From NCBI RefSeq assembly GCF_044704955.1, contig NW_027254527.1:1-64000 (forward strand): a stretch of 64,000 bases of DNA, given 5' to 3'. Origin of the DNA: Pristiophorus japonicus. Its lineage: Eukaryota. The stretch's first letter is position 1. Every line of letters begins with the position of its first letter. The position numbers and the translations under genes are program-made. The notes below the pieces were generated by a model. It was not told the origin of the DNA. It saw only the letters and a list, made by a program, of their open reading frames with translations, and did no database searches. Positions 1,398 through 43,176 of this stretch are shown here, piece after piece.

Positions 1398-2440
1398 ATT
1401 AGTGGGAAAGCGGGTTGTGTAGAGGACACAGAGAGGCTGCAAAGAGATTTAGATAGGTTAAGCGAATGGGCTAAGGTTTGGCAGATGGAATACAATGTCG
1501 GAAAGTGTGAGGTCATCCACCTTGGGGAAAAAACAGTAAAAGGGAATATTATTTGAATGGGGAGAAATTACAACATGCTGCGGTGCAGAGGGACCTGGGG
1601 GTCCTTGTGCATGAAACTCTTTTAGAAAAACATGTCTGTGTTGAAAGGTGTGGGACGTTATTCCACCTCTCTCAGAATCAGGTTTGGTTAAACTGTGAAA
1701 CGGAATGAAAAATGCTGAGAATCGTAGTGTGCATGAATCCCAAAAAGTTAGTTTGCAGGTGCAGCAGGTAATCAGGAAGGCGAATGGAATGTTGGCCTTC
1801 ATTGCGAGAGGGATGGAGTACAAAAGCAGGGAGGTCCTGCTGCAACTGTACAGGGTATTGGTGAGGTCGCACCTGGAGTACTGCGTGCAGTTTTGGTCAC
1901 CTTACTTAAGGAAGGATATACTAGCTTTGGAGGGGGTACAGAGACGATTCACTAGGCTGATTCCGGAGATGAGGGGGTTACCTTATGATGATAGATTGAG
2001 TAGACTGGGTCTTTACTTGTTGGAGTTCAGAAGGATGAGGGGTGATCTTATAGAAACATTTAAAATAATGAAAGGGATAGACAAGATAGAGGCAGAGAGG
2101 TTGTTTCCACTGGTCGGGGAGACTAGAACTAGGGGGCACAGCCTCAAAATACGGGGGAGCCAATTTAAAACTGAGTTGAGAAGGAATTTCTTCTCCCAGA
2201 GGGTTGTGAATCTGTGGAATTCTCTGCCCAAGGAAGCAGTTGAGGCTAGCTCATTGAATGTATTCAAGTCACAGATAGATAGATTTTTAACCAATAAGGG
2301 AATTAAGGGTTACGGGGAGCGGGCGGGTAAGTGGAGCTGAGTCCACGGCCAGATCAGCCATGATCTTGTTGAATGGTGGAGCAGGCTCGAGGGGCTAGAT
2401 GGCCTACTCCTGTTCCTAATTCTGATGTTCTTATGTTCTT
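1398..2440 (+). mobile_element. CR1-clade LINE, subfamily A, 5'-truncated, with a 112-nt insert at 1616-1727
   Basis: ORF2 C-terminus (HLEYCVQFWSP, TRGHSLK, NFFSQRVVNLWNSLP) and (TTCTTATG)n-type tail. Confidence 0.92.
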
Positions 2441-2790
2441 ATTACCAGATTACACCCCACCCCCGCCAAGAGGTTACCAGATTACACCCCCCCCCGCCAG
2501 GAGGTTACCAGATTACACCCCCCCCGCCAAGAGGTTACCAGATTACACCCCCCCCGGCCAAGAGGTTACCAGATTACACCCCCCCCCCCGCCAGGAGGTT
2601 ACCAGATTACACCCCCCCCGCCAAGAGGTTACCAGATTACACCCCACCCCCGCCAGGAGGTTACCAGATTACACCCTCCCCCGCCAAGAGGTTACCAGAT
2701 TACACCCCCCCCGGCCAAGAGGTTACCAGATTACAGCCCCCCCCCCCGCCAGGAGGTTACCCCTCCCCCATAGGAGGTTACCCCTCCCCC
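2440..2790. repeat. About 32-bp minisatellite (AGGTTACCAGATTACACn GCCAAG)
   Basis: Direct inspection. Confidence 0.9.
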
Positions 2791-3129
2791 AATCAGGGGC
2801 ACAGGGGAGCAACGCCCCCATCTTGCATTTCTTGGCTTGTAAATTGACGGAGAAAACATAATCAGAACGTCAGGGATCCACCCGAGCCGTTTTGGATCCA
2901 CTCGCTGTAACCCTGAACAACAGATCCCCAGCGGGGACTGCAATGGGGCTGAGCGACATGTTAATAAAAATGCAATCCCTGCTTTGTGAAATGCAGCGAG
3001 AGATGCAGACTGCTGAGTGAAATGGGAGAAATGCTGGTTTGCTCAGAGCCCCCATGTAGGGCTGTGCATCGATCTGTGACATCGAGCACACACTGAGGCA
3101 ATGAGGACCCCTCCTCACCATTCACAGCG

Positions 3130-3530
3130 AGCCCAGTGTCCAATCTCTCCATGGTCTCACCTCTCCCTCATCTCTCTATCCTTCTCCAGCCCTACAGCCC
3201 CTCCGGGAACCCTGCATTCCTCAACTCTGGCCTCTTGTACATCCTGCACTCCCATCGCCCCAAAACTGTCAGCCACCCGTGGCTTCAGCCCCGTGTCTGG
3301 GCCCGAACCTCAGGAACTCCCTCCTAAACCTCATGGCTTGTCACCCTCTCTCTCCCTGGGACACAGCCTGCCCCGTGACCCAGCTTTTGGTCACTCTCCT
3401 TCTTTCTCCTGCTTCACAATATTCCCACATTACAACACTGACTACAGACAGTGCTTCATTGGCTGGAAAGCGCTTTGAGGCGTCCGGTGCTGGTGACAGG
3501 CGCTATATAAATGCAAGTCTTTCCTTCCTT
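3130..3530 (+). mobile_element. L2/SINE 3'-end remnant
   Basis: Ends in GGCGCTATATAAATGCAAGTCTTT, the tail shared with the SINEs here. Confidence 0.5.
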
Positions 3531-4709: not shown

Positions 4710-6290
4710 ACAGTGTGCAATCAGTGATTCTCAAACCCAGGTGTAGTGTACACCGTGTGCAATCAGTGATTCTCAAACCCAGGTGTAGTATACACCGTGT
4801 GCAATCAGTGATTCTCAAACCCAGGTGTAGTGTACACCGTGTGCAATCAGTGATTCTCAAACCCAGGTGTAGTATACACCGTGTGCAATCAGTGATTCTC
4901 AAACCCAGGTGTAGTATACACCGTGTGCAATCAGTGATTCTCAAACCCAGGTGTAGTGTACACCGTGTGCAATCAGTGATTCTCAAACCCAGGTGTAGTG
5001 TACACTGTGTATAGTCAGTGATTCTCAAACCCAGGTGTAGTGTACACCGTGCAATCAGTGATTCTCAAACCCAGGTGTAGTGTACACCGTGTGCAATCAG
5101 TGATTCTCAAACCCAGGTGTAGTGTACACCGTGTATAGTCAGTGATTCTCAAACCCAGGTGTAGTGTACACCATGTATAGTCAGTGATTCTCAAACCCAG
5201 GCCTAATATACACCGTGTATAGTCAGTGATTATCAAACCCAGGTTTAATATACACCGTGTAATCAGTGATTCTCAAACCCAGGTTTAATATACACCGTAT
5301 ATAGTCAGTGATTGTCAAACCCAGGTTTAATATACACCGTGTATAGTCAGTGATTATCAAACCCAGGTTTAATATACACCGTGCAATCAGTGATTCTCAA
5401 ACCCAGGTTTAATATACACCGTGTATAGTCAGTGATTCTCAAACCCAGGTGTAATATACACCGTATATAGTCAGTGATTCTCAAACCCAGGTTTAATATA
5501 CACCGTGTATAGTCAGTGATTATCAAACCCAGGTTTAATATACACTGTATATAGTCATTGATTATCAAACCCAGGTTTAATATACACCGTGCAATCAGTG
5601 ATTCTCAAACCCAGGTGTAATATACACCGTATATAGTCAGTGATTATCAAATCCAGGTGTAATATACACCGTATATAGTCAGTGATTATCAAACCCAGGT
5701 TTAATATACACCATGTATAGTCAGTGATTATCAAACCCAGGTTTAATATACACCGTATATAGTCAGTGATTATCAAATCCAGGTGTAATATACACCGTAT
5801 ATAGTCAGTGATTATCAAACCCAGGTTTAATATACACCATGTATAGTCAGTGATTATCAAACCCAGGTGTAATATACACCGTATATAGTCAGTGATTATC
5901 AAACCCAGGTTTAATATACACCATGTATAGTCAGTGATTCTCAAACCCAGGTGTAATATACACCGTGTATAGTCAGTGATTCTCAAACCCAGGTGTAATA
6001 TACACCGTGTATAGTCAGTGATTCTCAAACCCAGGTTTAATATACACCGTATATAGTCAGCGATTATCAAACCCAGGTTTAATATACACCGTATATAGTC
6101 AGTGATTATCAAACCCAGGTTTAATATACACCGTATATAGTCAGTGATTCTCAAACCCAGGTTTAATATACACCGTATATAGTCAGTGATTATCAAACCC
6201 AGGTTTAATATACACCGTGTATAGTCAGTGATTATCAAACCCAGGTTTAATATACACTGTGTATAGTCAGTGATTATCAAACCCAGGTTG
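4710..6290. repeat. 42-bp minisatellite (TCAGTGATTCTCAAACCCAGGTGTAGTGTACACCGTGTGCAA)
   Basis: 14-aa periodicity in the spurious ORFs. Confidence 0.95.
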
Positions 6291-7166: not shown

Positions 7167-7299
7167 GTGGAACCCTTTCTATTTCTGCTACCCAGAGTTT
7201 TCATCCAAAACCTATCGGGTTGTGCAGGGCACCAGTCGGGCTGCTGTGTCCTTTCTCAGCAATGTGCCTCAGGAACAACATCATTAAAGACGCCCCCCC

Positions 7300-8490: not shown

Positions 8491-10229
8491 TTGGGCTGTA
8501 CCCCCTCCCTCTGTGTACACTCTATCCCCATATACACCGTGGGCTGTACCCCCTCCCTCTGTGTACACTCTATCCCCATATACACCATGGGCTGTACCCT
8601 CCCTCTGTGTACACTCTATCCACACACACACCATGGGCTGTACCCTCCCTCTGTGTACACTGTATCCCAATATACACCGTGGGCTGACCCTCCCTCTGTG
8701 TACACTCTATCCCACACACACCGTGGGCTGTACCCTCCCTCTGTGTACACTGTATCCCCATATACACCGTGGGCTGACCCTCCCTCTGTGTGCACTCTAT
8801 CCCACACACACCGTGGGCTGTACCATCCCTCTGTGTACACTCTATCCCCACACACACCGTGGGTTGTACCCCCTCCCTCTGTGTACACTGTATCCACACA
8901 CACCATGGGTTGACCCTCCCTCTGTGTACCCTCTATCCCCGTATACACCGTGGGCTGTACCCCCTCCCTCTGTGTACACTCTATCCCCACACACACCGTG
9001 GGCTGTACCCCCTCCCTCTGTGTACACTCTATCCCCATATACACCGTGGGCTGTACCCCCCTCCCTCTGTGTACATTCTATCCCCACACACACCATGGGC
9101 TGTACCCTCCCTCTGTGTACACTGTATCCCAATATACACCGTGGGCTGACCCTCCCTCTGTGTGCACTCTATCCCCACACACCGTGGCCTGACCCTTCCT
9201 CTGTGTACAGTCTATCCCCACACACCGTGGCCTGACCCTTCCTCTGTGCAACACTCTATCCCACACACCGTGGGCTGTACCCTCCCTCTGTGTACACTCT
9301 ATCCCCACACACCGTGGGCTGTACCCTCCCTCTGTGTACACTCTATTCCCAACATATACCGTGGGCTGTACCCTCCCTCTGTGTACACTCTATCCCCACA
9401 CACACCATGGGCTGTACCCCTCCCTCTGTGTACACTCTATCCCCACACACTGTGGGCTGACCCTCCCCCTGTGTACACTCTATCCCCACACACACCATAC
9501 GCTGACCCTCCCTCTGTGTACACTCTATCCACACACACCGTGGCCTGCCCCTCCCTCTGTGTACACTCTATCCCACACACACCGTGACCTGACCCTCCCT
9601 CTGTGTACACTCTATCCACACACACCGTGGCCTGACCCTCCCTCTGTGTACACTCTATCCCCACACACACCGTGACCTGACCCTCCCTCTGTGTACACTC
9701 TATCCACACACACCGTGGCCTGACCCTCCCTCTGTGTACACTCTATCCCCACACACACCGTGGGCTGACCCTCCCTCTGTGTACACTCTATCCCCACACA
9801 CACTGTGAGCTGTACCCTCCCTCTGTGTACACTCTATCCCCACACACACTGTGGGCTGTACACCCTCCCTCTGTGTACACTCTATCTCCACACACACTGT
9901 GGGCTGTACCCCCTCCCTCTGTGTACACTCTATCCCCACACACACTGTGGGCTGTACCCCCTCCCTCTGTGTACACTCTATCTCCACACACACTGTGGGC
10001 TGACCCTCCCTCTGTGTACACTCTATCCCCACACACACTGTGGGCTGTACCCCCTCCCTCTGTGTACACTCTATCTCCACACACACTGTGGGCTGACCCT
10101 CCCTCTGTGTACACTCTATCCCCACACACACTGTGGGCTGTACCCTCCCTCTGTGCACACTCTATCCCCACACACACCGTGGGCTGACCCTCCCTCTGTG
10201 TACACTCTATCCCCACACACACTGTGGGC
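8491..10229. repeat. About 45-bp minisatellite (TGGGCTGTACCCTCCCTCTGTGTACACTCTATCCCCACACACACCG)
   Basis: Direct inspection; same family at 19619-20224. Confidence 0.95.
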
Positions 10230-13036: not shown

Positions 13037-14879
13037 TGCAGGCAGTGTGAGCCCGTACCTTCACCATTCCCCCTCCATGGTGCAGTGTGAGCCCGTACCT
13101 TCACCATTCCCCCTCCATGGTGCAGTGTGAGCCCGTACTGACACCATTCCCCCTCCATGGTGCAGGCAGTGTGAGACGTACCGACACCATTCCCCCTCCA
13201 TGGTGCAGTGTGAGACGTACCGACACCATTCCCCCTCCATGGTGCAGTGTGAGACGTACCGACACCATTCCCCCTCCATGGTGCAGTGTGAGACGTACCG
13301 ACACCATTCCCCCTCCATGGTGCAGGCAGTGTGAGACGTACCGACACCATTCCCCTTCCATGGTGCAGGCAGTGTGAGACGTACCGACACCATTCCCCCT
13401 CCATGGTGCAGTGTGAGACGTACCGACACCATTCCCCCTCCATGGTGCAGTGTGAGACGTACCGACACCATTCCCCCTCCACGGTGCAGGCAGTGTGAGA
13501 CGTACCGACACCATTCCCCCTCCATGGTGCAGGCAGTGTGAGACGTACCGACACCATTCCCCCTCCATGGTGCAGGCAGTGTGAGACGTACCGACACCAT
13601 TCCCCCTCCATGGTGCAGTGTGAGACGTACCGACACCATTCCCCCTCCATGGTGCAGTGTGAGACGTACCGACACCATTCCCCCTCCATGGTGCAGTGTG
13701 AGACGTACCGACACCATTCCCCCTCCATGGTGCAGTGTGAGACGTACCGACACCATTCCCCCTCCATGGTGCAGTGTGAGACGTACCGACACCATTCCCC
13801 CTCCATGGTGCAGTGTGAGACGTACCGACACCATTCCCCCTCCATGGTGCAGGCAGTGTGAGACATACCGACACCATTCCCCCTCCATGGTGCAGTGTGA
13901 GACGTACCGACACCATTCCCCCTCCATGGTGCAGTGTGAGCCCGTACCGACACCATTCCCCCTCCATGGTGCAGTGTGAGACGTACCGACACCATTCCCC
14001 CTCCATGGTGCAGTGTGAGACGTACCGACACCATTCCCCCTCCATGGTGCAGTGTGAGACGTACCGACACCATTCCCCCTCCATGGTGCAGGCAGTGTGA
14101 GACGTACCGACACCATTCCCCCTCCATGGTGCAGTGTGAGCCCGTACCGACACCATTCCCCCTCCATGGTGCAGTGTGAGCCGTACCGACACCATTCCCC
14201 CTCCATGGTGCAGTGTGAGACGTACCGACACCATTCCCCCTCCATGGTGCAGTGTGAGACGTACCGACACCATTACCCCTCCATGGTGCAGTGTGAGACG
14301 TACCGACACCATTCCCCCTCCATGGTGCAGGCAGTGTGAGACGTACTGACACCATTCCCCCTCCATGGTGCAGTGTGAGACGTACCGACACCATTCCCCC
14401 TCCATGGTGCAGTGTGAGACGTACCGACACCATTCCCCCTCCATGATGCAGTGTGAGACGTACCGACACCATTCCCCCTCCATGGTGCAGTGTGAGACGT
14501 ACCGACACCATTCCCCCTCCATGGTGCAGTGTGAGACGTACCTACACCATTCCCCCTCCATGGTGCAGTGTGAGACGTACTGACACCATTCCCCCTCCAT
14601 GGTGCAGTGTGAGACGTACCGACACCATTCCCCCTCCATGGTGCAGTGTGAGACGTACCGACACCATTCCCCCTCCATGGTGCAGTGTGAGACGTACCGA
14701 CACCATTCCCCCTCCATGGTGCAGTGTGAGACGTACCGACACCATTCCCCCTCCATGGTGCAGTGTGAGCCGTACCGACACCATTCCCCCTCCATGGTGC
14801 AGTGTGAGACGTACCGACACCATTCCCCCTCCATGGTGCAGTGTGAGACGTACCGACACCATTCCCCCTCCATGGTGCA
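13037..14879. repeat. 39/43-bp minisatellite (GTGCAGTGTGAGACGTACCGACACCATTCCCCCTCCATG)
   Basis: Direct inspection. Confidence 0.95.
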
Positions 14880-15019: not shown

Positions 15020-18000
15020 AATGGCACTATTACAGGGAGTGAATGGTGCCCTATTACAGGGGGTGAATGGTGCCCTATTACAGGGGGTGAATGGTGCCCT
15101 ATTACAGGGGGTGAATGGTGCCCTATTCCAGGGGGTGAATGGAGCCCTATTACAGGGGGTGAATGGAGCCATATTACAGGGGGTGAATGGTGCCCTATTA
15201 CAGGGGTTGAATGGTGCCCTATTACAGGGGGTGAATGGTGCCGTATTACAGGAGGTGAATGGTGCCCTATTACAGGGCGTGAATGGTGCCCTATTACAGG
15301 GGGTGAATGGTGCCCTATTACAGGGGGTGAATGGTGCCCTATTACAGGGGGTGAATGGTGCCCTATTACAGGGGGTGAATGGTGCCCTATTACAGGGGGT
15401 TAATGGTGCCCTATTACAGGGGGTGATTGGTGCCCTATTACAGGAGGTGAATGGTGCCCTATTATAGGGGGTGAATGGTGCCCTATTACAGGGGGTGAAT
15501 GGTGCCCTATTACAGGGGGTGAATGGAGTCCTATTACAGGGGGTGAATGGTGCCCTATTACAGGGGGTGAATGGTGCCCTATTACAGGGGGTGAATGGTG
15601 CCCTATTACACGGGGTAAATGGTGCCCTATTACAGGGGTGAATGGTGCCCTATTACAGGTGGTGAATGGTGCCCTATTACAGGGGGTGAATGGAGCCCTA
15701 TTACAGGGGGTGAATGGTGCTCTATTACAGGGGGTGAATGGTGCCATATTACAGGAGGTGAATGGTGCCCTATTACAGGGGGTGAATGGTGCCCTATTAC
15801 AGGAGGTGAATGGTGCCCTATTACAGGGGATGAATGGTGCCCTATTACAGGGGGTGAATGGTGCCCTATTACAGGGGGTGAATGGTGCAGTATTACAGGG
15901 GGTGAATGGTGCCCTATTACAGGGGGTGAATGTGCCCTATTACAGGGGGAATGGTGCCCTATTACAGGGAGGGAATCGAGCCCTATTACAGGCGATGAAT
16001 GGCGCCCTATTACAGGGGGGGAATGGAGCCCTATTACAGAGGGTGAATGTGCCCTATTACAGGGGGGGAATGGAGCCCTATTACAGGCGGTGAATGGCGC
16101 CCTATTACAGGGGGGGAATGTGCCCTATTACAGGGGGGAATGGTGCCCTATTACAGGGAGTGAATGTGCCCTATTACAGGGGGTGAATGGTGCCCTATTA
16201 CAGGGGGTGAATGGTGCCCTATTACAGGGGGTGAATGGTGCCCTATTACAGGAGGTGAATGGTGCACTATTACAGGGGGTGAATGGTGCCCTATTACAGG
16301 GGGTGAATGGTGCCCTATTACAGGGGGTGAATGGTGCCCTATTACAGGAGGTGAATGTGCCCTATTACAGGGGGTGAATGGTGCCCTATTACAGGGGGTG
16401 AATGGTGCCCTATTACAGGAGGTGAATGGTGCCCTATTATAGGGGGTGAATGGTGCCCTATTACAGGGGGTGAATGGTGCCCTATTACAGGAGGTGAATG
16501 GTGCCCTATTACAGGGGGTGAATGGTGCCCTATTACAGGGGGTGAATGGTGCCCTATTACAGGGGCTGAATGGTGCCCTATTACAGGGGGTGAATGGAGC
16601 CCTATTACAGGGGGTGAATGTGCCCTATTACAGGGGGAATGGTGCCCTATTACAGGGAGGGAATCGAGCCCTATTACAGGCGATGAATGGCGCCCTATTA
16701 CAGGGGGGGAATGGAGCCCTATTACAGAGGGTGAATGTGCCCTATTACAGGGGGTGAATGGTGCCCTATTACAGGGGGTGAATGGTGCCCTATTACAGGA
16801 GGTGAATGGTGCACTATGACAGGGGGTGAATGGTGCCCTATTACAGGGGGTGAATGGTGCCCTATTACAGGGGGTGAATGGTGCCCTATTACAGGGGGTG
16901 AATGGTGCCCTATTACAGGGGGTGAATGGTGCCCTATTACAGGGGGTGAATGGTGCCCTATTACAGGAGGTGAATGTGCCCTATTACAGGGGGTGAATGG
17001 TGCCCTATTACAGGGGGTGAATGGTGCCCTATTACAGGAGGTGAATGGTGCCCTATTATAGGGGGTGAATGGTGCCCTATTACAGGGGGTGAATGGTGCC
17101 CTATTACAGGAGGTGAATGGTGCCCTATTACAGGGGGTGAATGGTGCCCTATTACAAAGGGTGAATGGTGCACTATTACAGGGGGTGAATGGTGCCCTAT
17201 TACAGGAGGTGAATGGTGCCCTATTACAGGGGGTGAATGTGCCCTATTACAGGGGGAATGGTGCCCTATTACAGGGGGGGAATGGTGCCCTATTACAGGG
17301 GGTAAATGTGCCCTATTACAGGGGGAATGGAGCCCTATTACAGGCGGTGAATGGCGCCCTATTACAGGGGATGAATGTGCCCTATTACAGGGGATGATTG
17401 TGCCCTATTACAGGGGGTGAATGGTGCCCTATTACAGGGGGTGAATGGTGCCCTATTACAGGGGGTGAATGGTGCCCTATTACAGGGGGTGAATGGTGCC
17501 CTATTCCAGGGGGTGAATGGAGCCCTATTACAGGGGGTGAATGGAGCCATATTACAGGGGGTGAATGGTGCCCTATTACAGGGGTTGAAAGGTGCCCTAT
17601 TACAGGGGGTGAATGGTGCCGTATTACAGGAGGTGAATGGTGCCCTATTACAGGGGGTGAATGGTGCCCTATTACAGGGGGTGAATGGTGCCCTATTACA
17701 GGGGGTGAATGGTGCCCTATTACAGGGGGTGAATGGTGCCCTATTACAGGGGGTGAATGGTGCCCTATTACAGGGGGTTAATGGTGCCCTATTACAGGGG
17801 GTGATTGGTGCCCTATTACACGGGGTAAATGGTGCCCTATTACAGGGGTGAATGGTGCCCTATTACAGGTGGTGAATGGTGCCCTATTACAGGGGGTGAA
17901 TGGAGCCCTATTACAGGGGGTGAATGGTGCTCTATTACAGGGGGTGAATGGTGCCATATTACAGGAGGTGAATGGTGCCCTATTACAGGGGGTGAATGGT

Positions 18001-23765: not shown

Positions 23766-24084
23766 TGGCTCAGTTGGGAATCATGGTATCATTCTCAGCT
23801 CTGTCAGAAGGTAGTGGGTTCAAGCCCGCTCCAGATCCTTGAGCCCATCATCCAGGCTGATACTCCAGTGCAGTGCTGAGGGAGTGATTAATGCAGTGAC
23901 ATTGACTGGGAGATTAACGCAGTGACATTGATTGGGAGATTAATGCACTGACATTGATTGGGAGATTAACGCACTGACATTGATTGGGAGATTAATGCAC
24001 TGACATTGATTGGGAGATTAACGCACTTACATTGATTGGGAGATTAATGCAGTGACATTGGTTGGGAGATTAACGCACTGACAA

Positions 24085-25617
24085 TTATAGCAGATGCATT
24101 CGTTATAATCGACCAAAATTCTCTGGACTCTGGGGAGGTACCAGCGGATTGGAAAGCAGCTAATGTAACGCCTCTGTTTAAAAAAGGGGGCAGACAAAAG
24201 GCAGGTAACTATAGGCCAGTTAATTTAACATCTGTAGTGAGGAAAATGCTTGAAACCATCATTAAGGAAGAAATAGCAGGACATCTAGATAGGAATAGTG
24301 CAATCAAGCAGACGCAACATGGATTCATGAAGGGGAAATCATGTTTAACTAATTTACTTCTTTGAGGATATAACGAGCATGGTGGATAGAGGTGTACCGA
24401 TGGATGTGGTGTATTTAGATTTCCAAAAGGCATTCGATAAGGTGCCACACAAAAGGTTACTGCAGAAGATAAAGGTACGCGGAGTCAGAGGAAATGTATT
24501 AGCATGGATCGAGAATTGGCTGGCTAACAGAAAGCAGAGAGTCAGGATAAATGGGTCCTTTTCAGGTTGGAAATTGGTGGTTAGTGGTGTGCCACAGGGA
24601 TCGGTGCTGGGACCACAACTGTTTACAATATACATAGATGACCTGGAAGAGGGGACAGAGTGTAGCGCAACAAAATTTGCAGATGACACAAAGATTAGTG
24701 GGAAAGCGGGTTGTGTAGAGGACACAGAGGCTGCAAAGAGATTGAGATAGGTTAAGCGAATGGGCTAATGTTTGCCAGATGGAATACAATGTCATAAAAT
24801 GTGAGGTCATCCACCTTGGAAAACAAAACAGTAAAAGGGAATATTATTTGAATGGGGAGAAATTGCAACATGCTGTGGTGCAGATGGACCTGGGGGTCCT
24901 TGTGCATGAATCCCAAAAAGTTAGTTTGCAGGTGCAGCAGGTAATCAGGAAGGCGAATGGAATGTTGGCCTTCATTGCGAGAGGGATGGAGTACAAAAGC
25001 AGGGAGGTCCTGCTGCAACTGTACAGGGTATTGGTGAGGCCGCACCTGGAGTACTGCGTGCAGTTTTGCTCACCTTACTTAAGGAAGGATATACTAGCTT
25101 TGGAGGGGGTACAGAGACGATTCACTCGGCTGATTCCGGAGATGAGGGGGTTACCTTATGATGATAGATTGAGTAGACTGGGTCTTTAATCGTTGGAGTT
25201 CAGAAGGATGAGGGGTGATCTTATAGAAACATTTAAAAAAATGAAAGGGATAGACAAGATAAGAGGCAGAGAGGTTGTTTCCACTGGTCGGGGAGACTAG
25301 AACTAGGGGGCACAGCCTCAAAATACAGGGGAGCCAATTTAAAACTGAGTTGAGAAGGAATTTCTTCTCCCAGAGGGTTGTGAACCTGTGGAATTCTCTG
25401 CCCAAAGAAGCAGTTGAGGCTAGCTCATTGAATGTATTCAAATCACAGATAGATAGATTTTTAACCAATAAGGGAATTAAGGGTTACGGGGAGCGGGCGG
25501 GTAAGTGGGACTGAGTCCACGGCCAGATCAGCCATGATCTTGTTGAATGGTGGAGCAGGCTCGAGGGGCTAGATGGCCTACTCCTGTTCCTAATTCTTAT
25601 GTTCTTATGTTCTTATG
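24085..25617 (+). mobile_element. CR1 LINE subfamily A, 5'-truncated, frameshifted, no insert
   Basis: RT motifs YLDFQKAFDKV, GVPQGSVLGP and FADD; (TTCTTATG)n tail. Confidence 0.92.
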
Positions 25618-25864
25618 ATTGGGAGATTAATGCACTGACATTGATTGGGAGATTAATGCACTGACATTGATTGGGAGATTAATGCGGTGACACTGATTGG
25701 GAGATTAGTGCACTGATATTGATTGGGAGATTAATGCACTGACATTGATTGGGAGATTAATGCACTGACATTGATTGGGAGATTAATGCACTGACATTGA
25801 TTGGGAGATTAATGCACTGACATTGATTGGGAGATTAATGCACTGACATTGATTGGGAGATTAA

Positions 25865-27835
25865 TAGAAACATAGAAACATAGAAAATAGGTGCAGGAGT
25901 AGGCCATTCAGCCCTTCTAGCCTGCACCGCCATTCAATGAGTTCATGGCTGAACATGCAACTTCAGTACAACATTCCTGCTTTCTCGCCATAACCCTTGA
26001 TCCCCCGAGTAGTAAGGACTACATCTAACTCCTTTTTGAATATATTTAGTGAATTGGCCTCAACAACTTTCTGTGTTAGAGAATTCCACAGGTTCACCAC
26101 TCTCTGGGTGAAGAAGTTTCTCCTCATCTCGGTCCTAAATGGCTTACCCCTTATCCTTAGACTGTGACCCCTGGTTCTGGACTTCCCCAATATTGGGAAC
26201 ATTCTTCCTGCATCTAACCTGTCTGAACCCATCAGAATTTTAAACGTTTCAATGAGGTCCCCTCTCATTCTTCTGAACTCCAGTGAATACAAGCCCAGTT
26301 GATCCAGTCTTTCTTGATAGGTCAGTCCCGCCATCCCAGGAATCAGTCTGGTGAACCTTCGCTGCACTCCCTCGATAGCAAGAATGTCCTTCCTCAAGTT
26401 AGGAGACCAAAACTGTACACAATACTCCAGGTGTGGCCTCACCAAGGCCCTGTACAACTGTACCAACACCTCCCTGCCCCTGTACTCAAATCCCCTCGCT
26501 ATGAAGGCCAACATGCCATTTGCTTTCTTAACCGCCTGCTGTACCTGCATACCAACCTTCAATGACTGACGTACCATGACACCCAGGTCTCGTTGCACCT
26601 CCCCTTTTCCTAATCTGTCACCATTCAGATAATACTCTGTCTCTCTGTTTTTAACCACCGAAGTGGATAACCTCACATTTATCCACATTATACTTCATCT
26701 GCCATGCATTTGCCCACTCACCAAACCTATCCAAGTCACTCTGCAGCCTCATAGCATCCTCCTCGCAGCTCACACTGCCACCTAACTTAGTGTCATCCGC
26801 AAATTTGGAGATACTACATTTAATCCCCTCGTCTAAATCATTAATGTAAAGTGTAAACAGCTGGGGCCCCAGCACAGAACCTTGCGGTACCCCACTAGTC
26901 ACTGCCTGCCATTCTGAAAAGTCCCCATTTACTCCTACTCTTTGCTTCCTGTCTGACAACCAGTTCTCAATCCATGTCAGCACACTACCCCCAATCCCAT
27001 GTGCTTTAACTTTGCACATTAATCTCTTGTGTGGGACCTTGTCGAAAGCCTTCTGAAAGTCCAAATATACCACATCAACTGGTTCTCCCTTGTCCACTCT
27101 ACTGGAAACATCCTCAAACAATTCCAGAAGATTTGTCAAGCATGATTTCCCTTTCACAAATCCATGCTGACTTGGACCTATCATGTCACCTCTTTCCAAA
27201 TGCGCTGCTATGACATCCTTAATAATTGATTCCATCATTTTACCCACTACGGAAGTCAGGCTGACCAGTCTATAATTCCCTGTTTTCTATCTCCGTCCTT
27301 TTTTAAAAAGTGGGGTTACATTGGCAACACTCCACTCGATAGGAACTGATCCAGAGTCAATGGAATGTTGGAAAATGACTATCAATGCATCCGCTATTTC
27401 CAAGGCCACCTCCTTAAGTACTGTGGGATGCAGTCCACCAGGCTCTGGGGATTTATCGGCCTTCAATCCCATCAATTTCCCCAACACAATTTCCCAACTA
27501 ATAAGGATTTCCCTCAGTTCCTCCTCCTTACTAGACCCTCTGACCCCTTTTATATCCGGAAGGTTGTTTGTGTCCTCCTTAGTGAATACTGAACCAAAGT
27601 ACTTGTTCAATTGGTCTGCCATTTCTTTGTTCCCCATTATGACTTCCCCTGATTCTGACTGCAGGGGACCTACATTTGTCTTTACTAACCTTTTTCTCTT
27701 TACATATCTATAGAAACCTTTGCAATCCGTCTTAATGTTCCCTGCAAGCTTCTTCTCGAACTCCATTTTCCCTGCCCAAATCAAAACCTTTGTCATCCTC
27801 TGCTGATTTCTAAATTGCTCCCAATCCCCGAGTTT
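25865..27835 (-). mobile_element. CR1 LINE subfamily B, 5'-truncated
   Basis: Frameshifted RT ORFs 25963-27796. Confidence 0.92.
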
Positions 27836-28668
27836 GCACTGACATTGATTGGGAGATTAATGCACTGATGTTGATTGGGAGATTAATGCGCTGACATTGA
27901 TTGGGAGATTAATGCACTGACATTGATTGGGAGATTAATGCGCTGACATTGATTGGGAGATTAATGCACTGACGTTGATTGGGAGATTAATGCGATGACA
28001 TTGATTGGGAGATTAATGCATTGAACAGTGATTGGGAGATTAATACGGTGACCATTGATTGGGAGATTAATGCACTGACATTGATTGGGATATAATGCAC
28101 TGACGTTCATTGAGAGATTAATGCGATGACATTGATTGGGAGATTAATGCACTGACATTGATTGGGAGATTAATGCATTGAACAGTGATTGGGAGATTAA
28201 TACGGTGACCATTGATTGGGAGATTAATGCACTGACATTGATTGGGATATAATGCACTGACGTTCATTGAGAGATTAATGCGATGACATTGATTGGGAGA
28301 TTAATGCACTGACGTTGATTGGGAGATTAATGCGCTGACATTGATTGGGTATTAATGCGCTGACATTGATTGGGTGATTAATGCGATGACATTGATTGGG
28401 AGATTAATGCACTGACGTTCATTGAGAGATTAATGCGATGACATTGATTGGGAGATTAATGCACTGACGTTCATTGAGAGATTAATGCACTGACATTGAT
28501 TGGGGGATTAATACACTGACCTTGATTGGGAGATTAGTGCACTGACATTGATTGGGAGATTAATGCGCTGACATTGATTGGGAGATTAATGCGCTGACAT
28601 TGATTGGGAGATTAATGCATTGAAGTTGATTGGGAGATTAATGCACTGAACAGTGATTGGGAGATTAA

Positions 28669-31600
28669 TAGAACATAGAAACACAGGAAATAGGTGCAGG
28701 AGTAGGCCATTCGGCCCTTCGAGCCTGCAGCGCCATTCAATGAGTTCATGGCTGAACATTCAACTTCAGCACCCCATTCCTGCTTTCTCGCCATTCCCCT
28801 TGATCCCCCGAGTAGTAAGGACTACATCTAACTCCTTTTTGAATATATTTAGTGAATTGGCCTCAACAACTTTCTGTGGTAGAGAATTCCACAGGTTCAC
28901 CACTCTCTGGGTGAAGAAGTTCCTCCTCATCTCGGTCCTAAATGGCTTACCCCTTATCCTTAGACTGTGACCCTTGGTTCTGGACTTCCCCAACATTGGG
29001 AACATTCTTCCTGCATCTAACCTGTCTAACCCCGTCAGAATTTTAAACGTTTCTATGAGGTCCCCTCTCATTCTTCTGAACTCCAGTGAATACAAGCCCA
29101 GTTGATCCAGTCTTTCTTGATAGGTCAGTCCCACCATCCCGGGAATCAGTCTGGTGAACCTTCGCTGCACTCCCTCAATAGCAAGAATGTCCTTCCTCAG
29201 GTTAGGAGACCAAAACTGTACACAATATTCCAGGTGTGGCCTCACCAAGGCCCTGTACAACTGTAGTAACACCTCCCTGCCCCTGTACTCAAATCCCCTC
29301 GCTTTGAAGGCCAACATGCCATTTGCTTTCTTAACCGCCTGCTGTACCTGCATGCCAACCTTCAATGACTGATGTACCATGACACCCAGGTCTCGTTGCA
29401 CCTCTCCTTTTCCTAATCTGTCATCATTCAGATAATAGTCTGTCTCTCCGTTTTTACCACCAAAGTGGATAACCTCACAATGATCCAGATTATACTTCAT
29501 CTGCCATGCATTTGCCCACTCACCTAACTTAACCAAGTCACTCTGCAGCCTCATAGCATCCTCCTCGCAGCTCACACTGCCACCCAACATAGTGTCATCC
29601 GCAAATTTGGAGAAACTACATTTAATCCCCTCATCTTAATCATTAATGTACAATGTAAACAGCTGGGGCCCCAGTACAGAACCTTGCGGTACCCCACTAG
29701 TCACTGCCTCCCATTCTGAAACGTACCCATTTACTCCTACTCTTTGCTTTCTGTCTGCCAACCAGTTCTCAATCCATGTCAGCACACTACCCCCAATCCC
29801 ATGTGCTTTAACTTTGCACATTAATCTCTTGTGTGGGACCTTGTCGAAAGCCTTCTGAAAGTCCAAATACACCACATCAACTGGTTCTCCCTTGTCCATT
29901 CTACTGGAAACATCCTCAAAAAATTCCAGAAGATTTGTCAAGCATGATTTCCCTTTCACAAATCCATGCTGACTTAGACCTAGCATGTCACCTCTTTCCA
30001 AATGCGCTGCTATGATATCCTTAATAATTGATTCCATCATTTTACCCACTACGGAAGTCAGGCTGACCGGTCTATAATTCCCTGTTTTCTCTCTCCCTCA
30101 TTTTTTAAAAAGTGGTGTTACATTGGCTACCCTCCACTCCGTAGGAACTGATCCAGAGTCTATGGAATGTTGGAAAATGACTGTCAATGCATCCGCTATT
30201 TCCAAGGCCACCTCCTTAAGTACTCTGGATGCAGTCCATCAGGCCCTGGGGATTTATCGGCCTTCAATCCCATCAATTTCCCCAACACAATTTCCCGACT
30301 AATAAGGATTTCCCTCAGTTCCTCCTCCTTACTAGACCCTCTGACCCCTTTTATATCCAGAAGGTTGTTTGTGTCCTCCTCAGTGAATACCGAACCAAAG
30401 TACTTGTTCAATTGGTCTGCCATTTCTTTGTTCCCCGTTATGACTTCCCCTGATTCTGACTGCAGGGGACCTACGTTTGTCTTTACTAATCTTTTTCTCT
30501 TTACATATCTATAGAAACTTTTGCAGTCCGTCTTAATGTTCCCTGCAAGCTTCTTCTCGTACTCCATTTTCCCTGCCCTAATCAAACCCTTTGTCCTCCT
30601 TTGCTGAGTTCTAAATTTCTCCCAGTCCCTGGGTTCACTGCTATTTCTGGCCAATTTGTATGCCACTTCCTTGGCTTTAATACTATCCCTGATTTCCCTA
30701 GATAGCCACGGTTGAGCCACCTTCCCTTTTTTATTTTAACGCCAGACAGGAATGTACAATTGTTGTAGTTCATCCATGCAGTCTCTAAATGTCTGCCATT
30801 GCCCATCCACAGTCAACCCCTTCAGTATCATTCGCCAATCTATCCTAGCCAATTCACGCCTCATACCTTCAAAGTTACCCTTCTTTAAGTTCTGGACCAT
30901 GGTCTCTGAATTAACCATTTCATTCTCCATCCTGATGTAGAATTCCACCATATTATGGTCACTCTTCCCCAAGGGGCCTCGCACAACGAGATTGCTAATT
31001 AATCCTCTCTCATTACACAACACCCAGTCTAAGATGGCCTCCTCCCTAGTTGGTTCCTTGACATATTGGTCTAGAAAACCATCCCAGGAAGCCCTCCAGG
31101 AAATCCTCCTCCACCATATTGCTTCTAGTTTGGTTAGCCCAATCTATATGCATATTAAAGTCACCCATGATAACTGCTGAACCTTTATTGCATGCACCCC
31201 TAATTTCCAGTTTGATCCCCTCCCCAACATCACTACTACTGTTTGGAAGTCTGTACACAACTCCCACTTGCGTTTTCTGCCCCTTGGTATTCCGTAGCTC
31301 CACCCATACCGATTCCACATCATCCACGCTAATATCTTTCGTTACAATTGCATTAATTTCCTCTGTAACCAGCAACACCACCCCAGCTCCTTTTCCTTTC
31401 TGTCTATCTTTCCTAAATGTTGAAACCCCTGGATGTTGAGTTCCCAGCCTTGGTCACCCTGGAGCCATGTCTCTGTGATGCCAACCACATCGTATCCGTT
31501 AACTGCTATCTGCACAGTTAATTCATCCACCTTATTCTGAATACTCCTCGCATTGAGGCACAGAGCCTTCAGGCTTGCCTTTTTAACACACTTATACCCT

Positions 31601-34649: not shown

Positions 34650-36375
34650 GCAGTGGCTCAGTGGGCAGCACTCTCGCCTCGGACTCACGTGGGCGTGGGT
34701 TCAAGTCCCGCTCCGGAGACTTGAGCACATAAATCTAGGCCGACACTCCCAGTGCAGTGCTGAGGGAGTGCTGCACTGTCGGAGGGGCAGTACTGAGGGA
34801 GCGCCGCACTGTCGGAGGGGCAGTACTGAGGGAGTGCCACACTGTCGGAGGGGCAGTACTGAGGGAGTGCTGCACTGTCGGAGGGGCAGTACTGAGGGAG
34901 TGCTGCACTGTCGGAGGGGCGGTACTGAGGGAGTGCCGCACTGTCAGAGGGGCAGTACTGAGGGAGTGCCGCACTGTCGGAGGGGCGGTACTGAGGGAGC
35001 GCCGCACTGTTGGAGGGGCGGTACTGAGTGAGCGCCGCACTGTCGGAGGGGCAGTACTGAGGGAGTGCTGCACTGTCGGAGGGGCGGTACTGAGGGAGTG
35101 CCGCACTGTCGGAGGGGCAGTACTGAGGGAGTGCTGCACTGTCAGAGGGGCGGTACTGAGGGAGTGCCGCACTGTCGGAGGGGCAGTACTGAGGGAGTGC
35201 CACACTGTCGGAGGGGCAGTGCTGAGGGAGTGCTGCACTGTCGGAGGGGCAGTACTGAGGGAGCGCCGCACTGTCGGAGGGGCAGTACTGAGGGAGTGCC
35301 ACACTGTCGGAGGGGCGGTACTGAGGGAGTGCCGCACTGTTGGAGGGGCGGTACTGAGTGAGCGCCGCACTGTCGGAGGGGCAGTACTGAGGGAGTGCTG
35401 CACTGTCGGAGGGGCGGTACTGAGGGAGTGCCGCACTGTCGGAGGGGCAGTACTGAGGGAGTGCTGCACTGTCAGAGGGGCGGTACTGAGGGAGTGCCGC
35501 ACTGTCGGAGGGGCAGTACTGAGGGAGCGCCGCACTGTCGGAGGGACAGTACTGGGGGAGTGCTGCACTGTCGGAGGGGCAGTACTGAGGGAGTGCCACA
35601 CTGTCGGAGGGGCAGTACTTGAGGGAGTGCTGCACTGTCGGAGGGACAGTACTGAGGGAGTGCTGCACTGTCGGAGGGGCAGTACTGAGGGAGTGCCGCA
35701 CTGTCGGAGGGACAGTACTGAGGGAGTGCCGCACTGTTGGAGGGGCAGTACTGAGTGAGCGCCGCACTGTCGGAGGGGCAGTACTGAGGGAGTGCTGCAC
35801 TGTCGGAGGGTCGGTACTGAGGGAGTGCCACACTGTCGGAGGGGCAGTACTGAGGGAGTGCTGCACTGTCAGAGGGGCGGTACTGAGGGAGTGCCGCACT
35901 GTCGGAGGGGCAGTACTGAGGGAGCGCCGCACTGTCGGAGGGACAGTACTGGGGGAGTGCTGCACTGTCGGAGGGGCAGTACTGAGGGAATGCCACACTG
36001 TCGGAGGGGCAGTACTTGAGGGAGTGCTGCACTGTCGGAGGGACAGTACTGAGGGAGCGCCGCACTGTCGGAGGGGCAGTACTGAGGGAGTGCTGCACTG
36101 TCGGAGGGGCAGTACTGAGGGAGCGCCGCACTGTTGGAGGTGCATTCTTTCAGGTGAATGGTTAAACTGATTCCCTGAGGTCCTGGGCCAATACTTATCC
36201 CTGAAGATCACAAAAACAGATGATCTGGTCATTACCAGCTTGTTTTGTGTGGGAGCTTGCTGTGCACAAACTCGCTATCATTATGTTACACTTCAAAAGT
36301 ACTTCAGCGGCTGTAAAGCGCTCAGGGACATCCTGAGATCATCAAAGGCGCTATATAAATGCAAGTTCTTCCTTT
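34650..36375 (+). mobile_element. tRNA-derived (DeuSINE-like) SINE with an internal 33-bp unit amplified about 40 times (34750-36135)
   Basis: A-box GTGGCTCAGTGG, B-box GGTTCAAGTCCC, tail GGCGCTATATAAATGCAAG. Confidence 0.75.
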
Positions 36376-40005: not shown

Positions 40006-40971
40006 TTACACTGATGTCAATGGAATGCTAACTCAGACGGAGTGTGATACCAGCTGCTGATTTGCCATGAACCGATTTACTATACCACCCAAAGGCAATT
40101 ACAGCTTTGTGGAATGAGACACAGGAGGAGACCGGTCAGCCAGCCACGCCTGGTCGAGCTCACGAATTAATCCCAGTCCCCTGCTTGTTCACCATAACCT
40201 TGTAAAAGGTTTTCACATGAAGTATTTATCCAATTCTCATTTAAAAGATACTGTGGAACCTGCTCCCACCGCCCTTTCACACATTGCGTTCCAGATCATA
40301 ACAACTCGCTGTGTAAAACCTTTCCTTATTTACCCCAATATTGTCTCCAAAAGTTTCCCCACTGAAGTCAGGCTGACTGGCCTGTTGCTCCCTTATACCC
40401 TTCACCTGCTTTCTCAATTCATAGAAACATAGAAAATAGGTGCAGGAGTAGGCCATTCAGCCCTTCGAGCCTGCACCACCATTCAATAAGATCATGGCTG
40501 ATCATTCCCTCAGTACCCCTTTCCTGCTTTCTCTCCATACCCCTTGGTCCCTTTAGCCGTAAGGGCCACATCTAACTCCCTTTTGAATTTTAAAAACTGC
40601 TTCTTCCCCAAGGAAAACAAACTGAAGTGTCCTTAATTCCAACAATAAATCCCGAGATATTTTTAATATCCGTGCAATGCTGACTGAGGCTGTTCATTAT
40701 ACCGGATGGGCCTCATACACTACATTACCGTATGAGGTTGATGGGTGTTTTTGTGACTGGAAGGATGTTTCCAGTGGGGTTCCGCAGGGCTCAGTACTGG
40801 GTCCCTTGCTTTTTCTGGTATGTATCAATGATCGAGACTTAAATGTTGGGGGTATGATTAAGAAGTTTGATACTAAAATTGGCCGTGTGGTTGATAATGA
40901 AGAAGAAAGCTGTGGACTGCAGGAAGATATCAATGTACTGGTCAGGTGGGCAGAACTGTGGCAAATGAAAT

Positions 40972-43176
40972 ACAAATCAAAGCTTTTACCGATATATAAA
41001 ACGGAAAAGAGTGACTAAAGTAAATGTTGGTCCTTTAGAAGATGAGAAGGGGGATTTAATAATGGGAAATATGGAAATGGCTGAGACCTTAAACAATTAT
41101 TTTGCTTCGGTCTTCACAGTGGAAGACACAAAAACCATGCCAGAAATTGCTGGTCACGGGAATGTGGGAAGGGAGGACCTTGAGATAATCACTATCACTA
41201 GGGGGGTAGTGCTGGACAGGCTAATGGATCTCAAGGTAGACAAGTCCCCTGGTCCTGATGAAATGCATCCCAGGGTATTAAAAGAGATGGCGGACGTTAT
41301 AGCAGATGCATTGGTTATAATCTACCAAAATTCTCTGGACTCTGGGGAGGTACCAGCGGATTGGAAAGCAGCTAATGTAACGCCTCTGTTTAAAAAAGGG
41401 GGCAGACAAAAGGCAGGTAACTATAGGCCGGTTAGTTTAACATCTGTAGTGGGGAAAATGCTTGAAACTATCATTAAAGAAGAAATAGCGGGACATCTAG
41501 ATAGGAATAGTGCAATCAAGCAGACGCAGCATGGATTCATGAAGGGGAAATCATGTTTAACTAATTTACTGGAATTCTTTGAGGATATAATGAGCATGAT
41601 AGATAGAGGTGTACCGATGGATGTGGTGTATTTAGATTTCCAAAAGGCATTCGATAAGGTGCCACACAAAAGGTTACTGCAGAAGATAAAGGTACGCGGA
41701 GTCAGGAAATGTAATAGCATGGATCGAGAATTGGCTGGCTAACAGAAAGTAGACAGTCGGGATAAATGGGTCCTTTTCAGGTGGGAAATCAGTGGTTAGT
41801 GTTGTGCCACAGGGATCGGTGCTGGGACCACAACTGTTTACAATATACATAGATGACCTGGAAGAGGGGACAGAGTGTAGTGTAACAAAATTTGAGAATG
41901 ACACTAAGATTAGTGGGAAAGCGGGTTGTGTAGAGGACACAGAGAGTCTGCAAAGAGATTTAGATAGGTTAAGCGAATGGGCTAAGGTTTGGCAGATGGA
42001 ATACAATGTCGGAAAATGTGAAGTCATCCACCTTGGAAAAAAAACAGTAAAAGGGAATATTATTTGAATGGGGAGAAATTACAACATGCTGCGGTGCAGA
42101 GGGACCTGGGGGTCCTTGTGCATGAATTTTCTCTAAGATTCTTTTCCCATACCATTCGCCTCCAACCTTCCTCTTTCTGCTCATAGCTCTTGTGATGCCA
42201 ACCCTTCCACTGCAGCCAGGGTTCATCCAATTCAGGATCTAATCTTGGGGCTGCAAAGACTCCAACCAGGCACAAAGAAAGTACACAGTAGATCTTCATC
42301 CTTTCTTCTTCGCTCCCTGCCGCTCCCGGGCTACAATCTATCGTACTCGCGAGCGCCACCAGTTTTTATGGATCGCGTCATCCCCGCACTGATACATTTT
42401 CAGCACTGATTGGCTGGCCCATCCAGGCATGGACCACACCCAGTCACGAGATGCAGTGCTCAGAGTGTGCTGTCGATTCATGAATCCCAAAAAGTTAGTT
42501 TTCAGGTGCAGCAGGTAATCAGGAAGGCGAATGGAATGTTGGCCTTCATTGCGAGAGGGATGGAGTACAAAAGCAGGGAGGTCCTGCTGCAACTGTATAG
42601 GGTATTAGTGAGGCCGCACCTGGAGTACTGCGTGCAGTTTTGGTCACCTTACTTAAGGAAGGATATACTAGCTTTGGAGGGGGTACAGAGACGATTCACT
42701 CGGCTGATTCCGGAGATGAGGGGGTTACCTTATGATGATAAATTGAGTAGACTGGGTCTTTACTCGTTGGAGTTCAGAAGGATGAGGGGTGATCTTATAG
42801 AAACATTTAAAATCATGAAAGGGATAGTCAAGATAGAGGCAGAGAGGTTGTTTCCACTGGTCAGGGAGACTAGAACTAGGGGGCACAGCCTCAAAATACG
42901 GGGGGGCCAATTTAAAACAGAGTTGAGAAGGAATTTCTTCTCCCAGAGTCTGTGGAATTCTCTGCTCAAGGAAGCAGTTGAGGCGAGCTCATTAAATGTA
43001 TTCAAGTCACAGATAGATAGATTTTTAACCAATAAGGGAATAAGGGTTACGGGGAGCGGGTGGGTAAGTGGAGCTGAGTCCACGGCCAGATCAGCCATGA
43101 TCTTGCTGAATGGCGGAGCAGGCTCGAGGGGCTAGATGGCCTACTCCTGTTCCTGATATGTTCTTATGTTCTTATG
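40972..43176 (+). mobile_element. CR1 LINE subfamily A carrying the cathepsin L fragment, inserted in an older CR1
   Basis: RT motifs in 41011-42067; ORF2 C-terminus in 42480-43080; tail at 43155-43176. Confidence 0.92.
42128..42478 (-). pseudogene. ctsl: Captured cathepsin L-like 5' fragment (upstream sequence, 5'UTR and about 57 codons of prepropeptide) inside a CR1
   Basis: ATG at 42299: MKIYCVLSLCLVGVFAAPRLDPELDEPWLQWKGWHHKSYEQKEEGWRRMVWEKNLR, a signal peptide plus the I29 propeptide EEGWRRxxWEKN motif. Flanked by a CATGAAT duplication. Confidence 0.88.

What the first reader, a model, noticed from the sequence alone, without database searches (positions are those of the whole stretch)
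1606..42485. A fixed cargo-capture site in a CR1 subfamily: different inserts at the same nucleotide in separate copies
Seen: three copies of CR1 subfamily A span the motif GGGTCCTTGTGCATGAA^TCCCAAAAAG. Copy 2 (motif core at 24901-24910) is empty. Copy 1 has a 112-nt unrelated insert (1616-1727) flanked by a 10-nt duplication, TGTGCATGAA. Copy 3 has a 351-nt cathepsin L insert (42128-42478) flanked by CATGAAT. Both left junctions fall after CATGAA within 1 nt, and only the duplication length differs. Inference: two unrelated insertions at one position of a multi-kb element suggest a sequence-specific nick with a fixed plus-strand cut and variable second cut, filled by reverse-transcribed cellular RNA. 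This would be a cassette-like acquisition site, either element-driven gene-fragment capture or host-driven disruption of ORF2. I know no description of this in CR1. The evidence is only n=2.
Basis: partly seen in the sequence, partly recalled or inferred. Interest (0 to 1): 0.9.

Follow-up and report, generated by a model that had tools for sequence, protein, structure and literature searches.

The report
Recurrent landing site inside CR1 retrotransposons
Two of three copies of one CR1 jumping gene in this shark window carry unrelated inserts at the same nucleotide; one insert is a spliced cathepsin L mRNA fragment. This looks like the cut site of a site-specific LINE enzyme, not a cargo-capture device of CR1.

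Summary
Three CR1 subfamily-A copies carry GGTCCTTGTGCATGAA|TCCCAAAAAG. Copy 2 is empty. Copy 1 has a 112-nt insert with a perfect 10-nt duplication, and copy 3 a 351-nt insert with a perfect 7-nt duplication.

The geometry matches target-primed reverse transcription. The fixed edge is a nick after CATGAA on the CR1 sense strand, and the other edge varies. That geometry predicts the orientation of the RNA copy, and the cathepsin L insert has it. The insert also lacks a conserved intron, so it came from spliced mRNA. It has no poly(A) and stops inside the coding region.

The "cassette capture / host disruption" reading is not supported. The likelier cause is a sequence-specific LINE endonuclease using this CR1 site as a landing pad, with cellular RNA copied in as a by-product.

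The scan has noted this before on other DNA of this genome: many notes describe a Tx1-type LINE landing at one fixed CR1 ORF2 site. I could not verify that it is the same site.

The contig lay-down was neutral. Its apparent joints at the site are Hi-C ligation scars, because the site contains GAATC. The evidence here is still n=2.

The parts
1397..1615 (+). CR1 subfamily-A copy 1, left part. It is 5'-truncated at about 1397, sits inside a C-rich satellite, and ends ...GGTCCTTGTGCATGAA.
1606..1615 (+). Left copy of the 10-nt target duplication TGTGCATGAA (copy 1).
1616..1727 (.). 112-nt insert of unknown origin. It has no other copy in the window, no Rfam family and no fold signal. By TPRT geometry its RNA sense would be the minus strand.
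1728..2442 (+). CR1 copy 1, right part. It begins with the right copy of TGTGCATGAA (1728-1737) and runs to the (TTCTTATG)n tail.
24085..25616 (+). CR1 subfamily-A copy 2, uninterrupted. The empty site TGTGCATGAA|T is at 24901-24911, within ORF2 ...DLGVLVHE|SQKVSLQ...
40969..42127 (+). CR1 subfamily-A copy 3, left part (the RT region starts at about 40969).
42121..42127 (+). Left copy of the 7-nt target duplication CATGAAT (copy 3).
42128..42478 (-). 351-nt insert carrying the 5' part of a cathepsin L mRNA, antisense to CR1. It has no poly(A).
42129..42299 (-). Cathepsin L coding part: 57 codons, MKIYC...WEKNLRE. It is continuous across the conserved intron position after residue 41 (window 42170-42185).
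42300..42478 (-). 179 nt upstream of the ATG, presumably 5' UTR. It contains a CCAAT motif (42409-42413) and CATAAAAA (42363-42370).
42479..43175 (+). CR1 copy 3, right part. It begins with the right copy of CATGAAT (42479-42485) and runs to the tail.

Best explanation
The motif GTGCATGAA|TCCC in ORF2 of this CR1 subfamily is the cut site of a sequence-specific LINE endonuclease. The most likely enzyme is that of the Tx1-type family which other notes of this scan report landing at one fixed CR1 ORF2 site in this genome. Proposed steps follow. (1) The enzyme nicks the CR1 sense strand after CATGAA (inferred from the shared edge of the two duplications). (2) The freed 3'-OH primes reverse transcription of an RNA. 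In copy 3 this was a spliced cathepsin L mRNA, primed internally at an A-rich stretch in codon 57 and copied towards its 5' end. The orientation and the intron loss are shown; copying right up to the cap is inferred. In copy 1 it was an unidentified 112-nt template, possibly a 5'-truncated 3' end of the LINE itself (untested). (3) The second strand is cut 7 or 10 nt away, giving target duplications of variable length (shown). On this reading the inserts are dead by-products of a landing-pad enzyme acting on the wrong RNA. They are not cargo acquired by CR1.
For: Two independent copies are interrupted within 1 nt of each other with perfect 10- and 7-nt duplications. The third copy is empty, and no other CR1 copy in the window is interrupted. 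The fixed edge lies on the + strand. TPRT then predicts that the RNA sense of the insert is on the minus strand, and cathepsin L is sense on the minus strand. The insert runs through the place where five library proteins (P0125, P0134, P0149, P0153, P0160) read into an intron, and it matches the spliced relatives P0121 and P0122. Left and right CR1 parts of each copy show matching divergence, so each is one element that was split. Related CR1 subfamilies B and C have a different sequence at this position and are uninterrupted. Tx1-clade endonucleases are known to be highly sequence-specific nickases that target other repeats, including a transposon (PMC1950540, PMC4494074). As a lead, not support: 28 notes of this scan match 'Tx1 CR1 target', describing a Tx1-type LINE at one fixed CR1 ORF2 site with duplications of 9-17 nt in this genome. 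As a weak hint: in run X2 a 97-nt deletion variant starts exactly at 24910.
Against: There are only two events. There is no Tx1 copy or Tx1 ORF in this window, and neither insert is recognisably Tx1. Identity of my site with the Tx1 target of the other notes is untested, because the notes give no sequence. If Tx1 is the usual occupant of the site, finding two non-Tx1 occupants and no Tx1 here is somewhat unexpected. There is no poly(A) or LINE tail at the 3' end of either insert. The contig lay-down did not list 24910 among the best-supported loose-end places, although the table was subsampled and counts contigs rather than copies. The upstream 179 nt of the cathepsin insert contains promoter-like motifs (CCAAT, CATAAAAA), so the template may not have been the ordinary mRNA.
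Confidence: 0.5

Rival explanations
1. The nick is made by CR1's own endonuclease, or by another LINE that is not site-specific but has a strong local preference. The antisense strand of the site reads ATTCATG, which resembles the CR1 tail unit (A/G)TTCTTATG, so the nicked end might pair with CR1-like tails.
For: The CR1 tail is (TTCTTATG)3, and the minus strand of the site is GGGA|TTCATGCAC. The family is enormously abundant and young: hundreds of thousands of contigs were laid and copies are 95-98% alike, so its enzymes have been active.
Against: The three CR1 copies themselves integrated without clear target duplications and at unrelated flank sequences. No CR1 copy sits antisense in this site in the window. 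The similarity to the tail needs a 2-nt gap.
Confidence: 0.15
2. The inserts arose while the CR1 copies were being made. The reverse transcriptase left the CR1 template at a pause point, copied another RNA, and returned a few bases back, which created the short duplications.
For: Non-LTR reverse transcriptases jump between templates (cited in PMC4494074). Summed contig depth steps up just right of the site in all four runs, which could reflect frequent stops there.
Against: First-strand switching would place the foreign RNA in the same sense as CR1, but cathepsin L is antisense. A precise duplication on both sides is the signature of staggered DNA cuts, not of template jumps. The depth step coincides with the start of a stretch conserved among CR1 subfamilies, and the tool warns that contig depth is a poor measure.
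Confidence: 0.1
3. Coincidence: two ordinary, unrelated nested insertions happened to fall at the same place.
For: There are only two events. The scan looked at hundreds of windows rich in repeats, so a coincidence with p of about 0.003 per pair will occur somewhere.
Against: The two events share the same strand polarity of fixed and variable edge. The orientation prediction was met. There are no other interruptions in about 10 kb of CR1 in the window. Other notes independently report a fixed CR1 ORF2 landing site in this genome.
Confidence: 0.08
4. One reading: a cassette-like acquisition site by which CR1 captures gene fragments, or by which the host disrupts ORF2.
For: The fixed site lies inside ORF2, and one insert is a host gene fragment carrying its start codon and upstream sequence.
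Against: The cargo is antisense, truncated inside the propeptide and has no evident use. Neither insert occurs a second time in the window. There is no evidence of re-amplification. A simpler known mechanism accounts for every feature.
Confidence: 0.05

Closest known systems
Tx1L in Tx1D (Xenopus laevis) and other target-specific Tx1-clade LINEs (Keno in U2 genes, Kibi/Koshi in microsatellites)
   Same: An APE-type endonuclease nicks one exact sequence inside another multicopy repeat, so independent copies of the target are hit at the same nucleotide (PMC1950540, PMC4494074).
   Different: The target here is the ORF2 of a CR1 LINE, not a DNA transposon or an RNA gene. In this window the occupants are a cellular mRNA fragment and an unidentified 112-nt piece, not Tx1 copies. 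No Tx1 ORF is present in the window.
LINE-mediated processed pseudogenes (L1-type retrocopies)
   Same: Target duplications of variable length, loss of an intron and TPRT geometry.
   Different: There is no poly(A) tail. The copy starts inside the coding region and keeps the 5' end, whereas retrocopies usually keep the 3' end and lose the 5' end. The target is fixed instead of a loose TTTT/AA-like consensus.
Chimeric retrocopies by template switching (U6/L1 type)
   Same: A LINE reverse transcriptase copies a cellular RNA that is not its own.
   Different: Those chimeras join the parts in the same orientation and share one pair of outer duplications. Here the foreign piece is antisense and is itself flanked by a duplication of CR1 sequence.
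cDNA capture at chromosome breaks (yeast HO-break experiments; from my own knowledge, not checked here)
   Same: Reverse-transcribed cellular RNA fills a DNA break.
   Different: Those events lack regular target duplications and have no fixed natural site.

Membership tests
CR1 LINE (the target element) | ORF2 reverse transcriptase related to CR1-clade elements | tested here: met
   bird CR1 ORF2 fragments match at 46-51% identity over the full query. Callorhinchus and Chiloscyllium RT proteins match at 67-72%. Pfam RVT_1 is recorded on the hits.
CR1 LINE (the target element) | 3' end made of a short 8-nt repeat rather than poly(A), with frequent 5' truncation | tested here: met
   the tail is (TTCTTATG)3 in all three copies. 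The copies start at 1397, 24085 and about 40969.
TPRT-made retrocopy (processed pseudogene) | Flanking target-site duplication | tested here: met
   Perfect 10-nt and 7-nt duplications.
TPRT-made retrocopy (processed pseudogene) | Introns of the source gene absent | tested here: met
   the insert is continuous where five library proteins read into an intron (after residue 41). Only this one intron position could be tested.
TPRT-made retrocopy (processed pseudogene) | Poly(A) tail at the 3' end next to the first nick | tested here: not met
   the copy ends in ...CTTAGAGAAA(A) inside codon 57, with only 3-4 A. Copy 1 ends ...AAAAGAGT.
Landing site of a target-specific (Tx1-clade) LINE | Independent target copies hit at the same nucleotide, with one fixed edge | tested here: met
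   Two of three sites are filled. The edges lie after CATGAA or CATGAAT on the + strand, and the other edge is 10 or 7 nt away. n=2.
Landing site of a target-specific (Tx1-clade) LINE | The LINE itself (Tx1-type EN/RT ORFs, or its 3' end) occupies the site | tested here: not met
   No Tx1-type ORF was found among the ten large window ORFs scanned with Pfam. The 52-56 kb element is Ty3/gypsy-like. Insert 3 is cathepsin L and insert 1 is unidentified. Other notes report Tx1 at a CR1 site elsewhere in this genome, but I could not compare sequences.
Landing site of a target-specific (Tx1-clade) LINE | The endonuclease nicks this sequence specifically | not testable with these tools
   This needs a nicking assay with the recombinant endonuclease.
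Template-switch chimeric retrocopy | Foreign RNA joined in the same orientation as the LINE, with no internal duplication of LINE sequence | tested here: not met
   Cathepsin L is antisense to CR1 and is flanked by duplicated CR1 letters.

The most novel reading that the evidence does not exclude
The site is cut by something other than a resident Tx1 LINE, either a CR1-encoded or a host-encoded sequence-specific nuclease.
Probability: 0.1. Interest if true: 0.8.

Novelty: new variant of a known kind. Interest (0 to 1): 0.45.

Why it matters
If the site is the landing pad of a Tx1-type LINE, this adds a LINE coding region to the known targets of target-specific LINEs. That part has already been noted by this scan on other DNA of the genome. 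What this window adds is that the same cut can be filled with spliced host mRNA copied from an internal priming point to the 5' end. That would show a 'stringent', site-specific LINE machinery (or a repair polymerase working at its cut) acting on foreign RNA. It would also give a defined genomic address at which such rare by-products can be collected and counted. It does not support a new gene-capture function for CR1.

Tried and rejected
1. Protein route to sample more copies. The best hits were only 85% identical, so they come from other species or subfamilies. Their N-terminal boundaries at query residues 12, 45, 53 and 61 are ATG/GTG/TTG start calls, not junctions. This gave no information on the hot spot.

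2. Metagenome scan for the left half-site. It returned 57 chance 17-mers in unrelated, mostly bacterial, contexts and no CR1.

3. Contig lay-down on the empty copy.
- Four of the 15 listed joints touch 24909/24910, which at first looked like a hot spot.
- All the recurrent X1 joints lie at GANTC or GATC sites, and the site itself contains GAATC. They are Hi-C ligation scars, so I rejected them as evidence.
- The step-up in summed depth right of the site coincides with a block conserved across CR1 subfamilies, and contig depth is unreliable.
- All runs were Logan contigs, so no read-level junction test or per-position count was possible.

4. Insert 1. It has no Rfam family, no fold signal (z = +0.5 on both strands) and no second copy in the window.

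5. Earlier notes. Look-ups by sequence were blank. 'Tx1 CR1 antisense' matched nothing informative.

The cathepsin L gene structure was therefore inferred from intron read-through proteins rather than from genomic DNA.

7. No Tx1 ORF was found in the window.

8. Literature. No held paper describes a Tx1-type element that targets CR1.
Full report
**What is in the sequence**

The finding is accurate to the base.
- The window holds exactly three copies of the left half-site GGTCCTTGTGCATGAA and three of the right half-site CATGAATCCCAAAAAGTTAG.
- In copy 2 (24085-25616) the two halves overlap as one uninterrupted motif.
- In copy 1 they are separated by 112 nt (1616-1727) and TGTGCATGAA is duplicated (1606-1615 and 1728-1737).
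- In copy 3 they are separated by 351 nt (42128-42478) and CATGAAT is duplicated (42121-42127 and 42479-42485).
- The + strand is the CR1 sense strand. The site lies in ORF2 at ...DLGVLVHE|SQKVSLQ....

**What the host element is**

- It is a CR1. ORF2 fragments of bird CR1 match at 46-51% over the whole query, and chimaera and shark RT proteins match at 67-72%.
- All three copies end in (TTCTTATG)3, the kind of 8-nt tail repeat typical of CR1.
- The copies are independent integrations. They are 5'-truncated at 1397, 24085 and about 40969, and they sit in different satellites.
- Left and right parts of copies 1 and 3 are equally similar to each other, 97.7% and 96.9%. Each is therefore one element that was split, not two fragments that happen to abut.
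- Related CR1 subfamilies in the window, about 70% identical, read GTACATCAGTCATTGAAGG at the homologous place and are uninterrupted.

**Is it more than chance?**

Given one insertion, a second within 1 nt over the 924 shared bases has p of about 0.003. No other insertion interrupts roughly 10 kb of CR1 sequence in the window. On the other hand this is n=2, picked out of a scan of hundreds of repeat-rich windows, so chance cannot be dismissed on the window alone.

**Geometry**

- The edge shared by the two events is the right end of the duplication on the + strand: after CATGAA in copy 1, and after CATGAA or CATGAAT in copy 3, where the next inserted base is also T.
- The other edge differs by four bases.
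- In target-primed reverse transcription the fixed edge is the first nick. Its 3'-OH is extended with the complement of an RNA.
- The + strand downstream of CATGAA should therefore read antisense RNA, starting at the priming point and running towards the RNA's 5' end.
- Copy 3 shows exactly this. The + strand reads the antisense of cathepsin L from codon 57 back through the ATG and 179 nt of upstream sequence.
- This is a real test with even odds of failing, and it passed.

**RNA origin of insert 3**

- The 57 codons (MKIYC...WEKNLRE) match cathepsin L prepropeptides: 65-67% identity to P0121 and P0122, with E down to 3e-17.
- Five library proteins (P0125, P0134, P0149, P0153, P0160) leave the cathepsin sequence directly after ...YHE with a valine. 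P0125 returns to ...EEGWRR 22 residues later. These are read-throughs of an intron.
- The window's insert runs straight on (SYEQ-KEEGWRR), like the spliced relatives. The insert therefore lacks a conserved intron and derives from spliced mRNA.
- It has no poly(A). It ends in ...CTTAGAGAAA(A) inside the coding region, which indicates internal priming.
So only one intron position is tested, and it remains an inference that the copy reaches the true 5' end of the mRNA.
- The upstream 179 nt contains CCAAT and CATAAAAA motifs about 45 nt apart. If these are the real promoter, the template started upstream of the usual start site. This is unexplained.

**Insert 1**

The 112 nt have no second copy in the window, no Rfam family and no fold signal on either strand. 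Its origin is unknown. A 5'-truncated 3' end of a LINE is possible.

**Who makes the nick?**

- A fixed nick site inside another multicopy repeat is the known habit of target-specific LINEs, notably the Tx1 clade.
- Tx1L inserts in the transposon Tx1D, and its endonuclease nicks almost exclusively at that site in vitro (PMC1950540). Keno, Kibi and Koshi target U2 genes and microsatellites (PMC4494074, PMC4640811).
- After I had reached that reading, the scan's own notes gave a specific lead. 28 notes on other pieces of this genome match 'Tx1 CR1 target', among them eight listed with titles and six with follow-up reports. They describe a Tx1-type LINE that lands at one exact site in CR1 ORF2, with duplications of 9, 11, 16 or 17 letters, and stacks there.
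- Variable duplication length with one fixed nucleotide is what I see here.
- I could not verify that the site is the same. The notes carry no sequence, look-ups by sequence were blank, and DNA words are not accepted.
- This window holds no Tx1 ORF. The only other large retroelement, at 52-56 kb, is Ty3/gypsy-like.
- The notes are therefore a lead, not evidence. It also counts somewhat against the link that neither occupant here is recognisably Tx1.

**Genome-wide test attempted**

- All runs that hold this DNA are kept only as Logan contigs.
- I laid four runs on the empty copy so that any filled copy would appear as a loose end.
- The family is enormous: 277,502, 149,545 and 18,990 contigs in three runs of the same species, and 43 in a relative. 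The tables were subsampled.
- The site is not among the six best-supported loose-end places of any run. Those places are private indels of copy 2.
- Four of the 15 listed joints touch 24909/24910. However, every recurrent X1 joint lies at a GANTC or GATC site (24126, 24322, 24482, 24908, 25119, 25513, 25217, 25536), with the filled-in ends expected of a Hi-C library. The site itself contains GAATC, so these are ligation scars, not biology.
- What remains is weak. In run X2, a 97-nt deletion variant starts exactly at 24910. In the related species, a contig ends exactly at 24910. Summed depth steps up right of the site, but this coincides with a block conserved among subfamilies.
- I treat the lay-down as neutral.

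**Other attempts to sample copies**

The protein library returned other species' subfamilies whose boundaries reflect start-codon calls. A metagenome scan for the half-site returned only chance matches.

**Verdict**

The functional reading is not supported, whether as a cargo-capture cassette of CR1 or as a host device against ORF2.

The best explanation, at confidence about 0.5, is a site-specific LINE endonuclease using this CR1 motif as a landing pad, probably the Tx1-type family noted elsewhere in this genome. Cellular RNA is occasionally copied into the cut. The rivals are:
- a strong local preference of CR1's own or another LINE's endonuclease (0.15);
- template switching during CR1 integration (0.10), disfavoured by the antisense orientation and the duplications;
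- coincidence (0.08);

No held paper describes a Tx1-type element that targets CR1. The kind of system is nevertheless known, and the scan has already noted it on other DNA. The new element here is the mRNA-derived filling of the site.

Noticed in passing
window 1-1395, 2442-2761, 4721-6289, 8492-10229, 13042-14879, 15027-19252, 23886-24083, 25616-25865, 27835-28669, 34754-36144, 58823-64000: The window is mostly satellite arrays of many different units (21, 31, 42, 45, 39, 24, 26, 33 and 47 nt). The CR1 copies sit inside or between them, which suggests a heterochromatic region.
   Followed up: partly
window 25618-27828 and 28421-30629: A 2.2-kb block (26-nt satellite plus a subfamily-B CR1 on the minus strand) is duplicated in tandem at 94.8% identity.
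   Followed up: no
window 52196-56147, minus strand: Ty3/gypsy-like LTR retrotransposon ORFs: RVT_1, RNase H-like, integrase zinc-binding and integrase core domains.
   Followed up: no
run X1, laid on window 24085-25616: Run X1 behaves as a Hi-C library. Its contigs carry joints only at GANTC and GATC sites. Anyone laying this run on repeats of this genome will see false 'recurrent breakpoints' at such sites.
   Followed up: yes
window 42300-42478, minus strand: The 179 nt upstream of the cathepsin L start codon carry a CCAAT box and a CATAAAAA motif about 45 nt apart, arranged like a promoter. If real, the reverse-transcribed RNA began upstream of the usual start site.
   Followed up: no
window 24917-25616 versus 24085-24916: Summed contig word depth rises 1.5- to 3-fold just right of the site in all four runs. 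This may only reflect conservation among CR1 subfamilies or ordinary 5' truncation, and I did not resolve it.
   Followed up: partly
window 34688-36232, minus strand: A 515-aa ORF over a 33-nt satellite gives a Pfam Mucin-like hit. This is most likely a repeat artefact.
   Followed up: no
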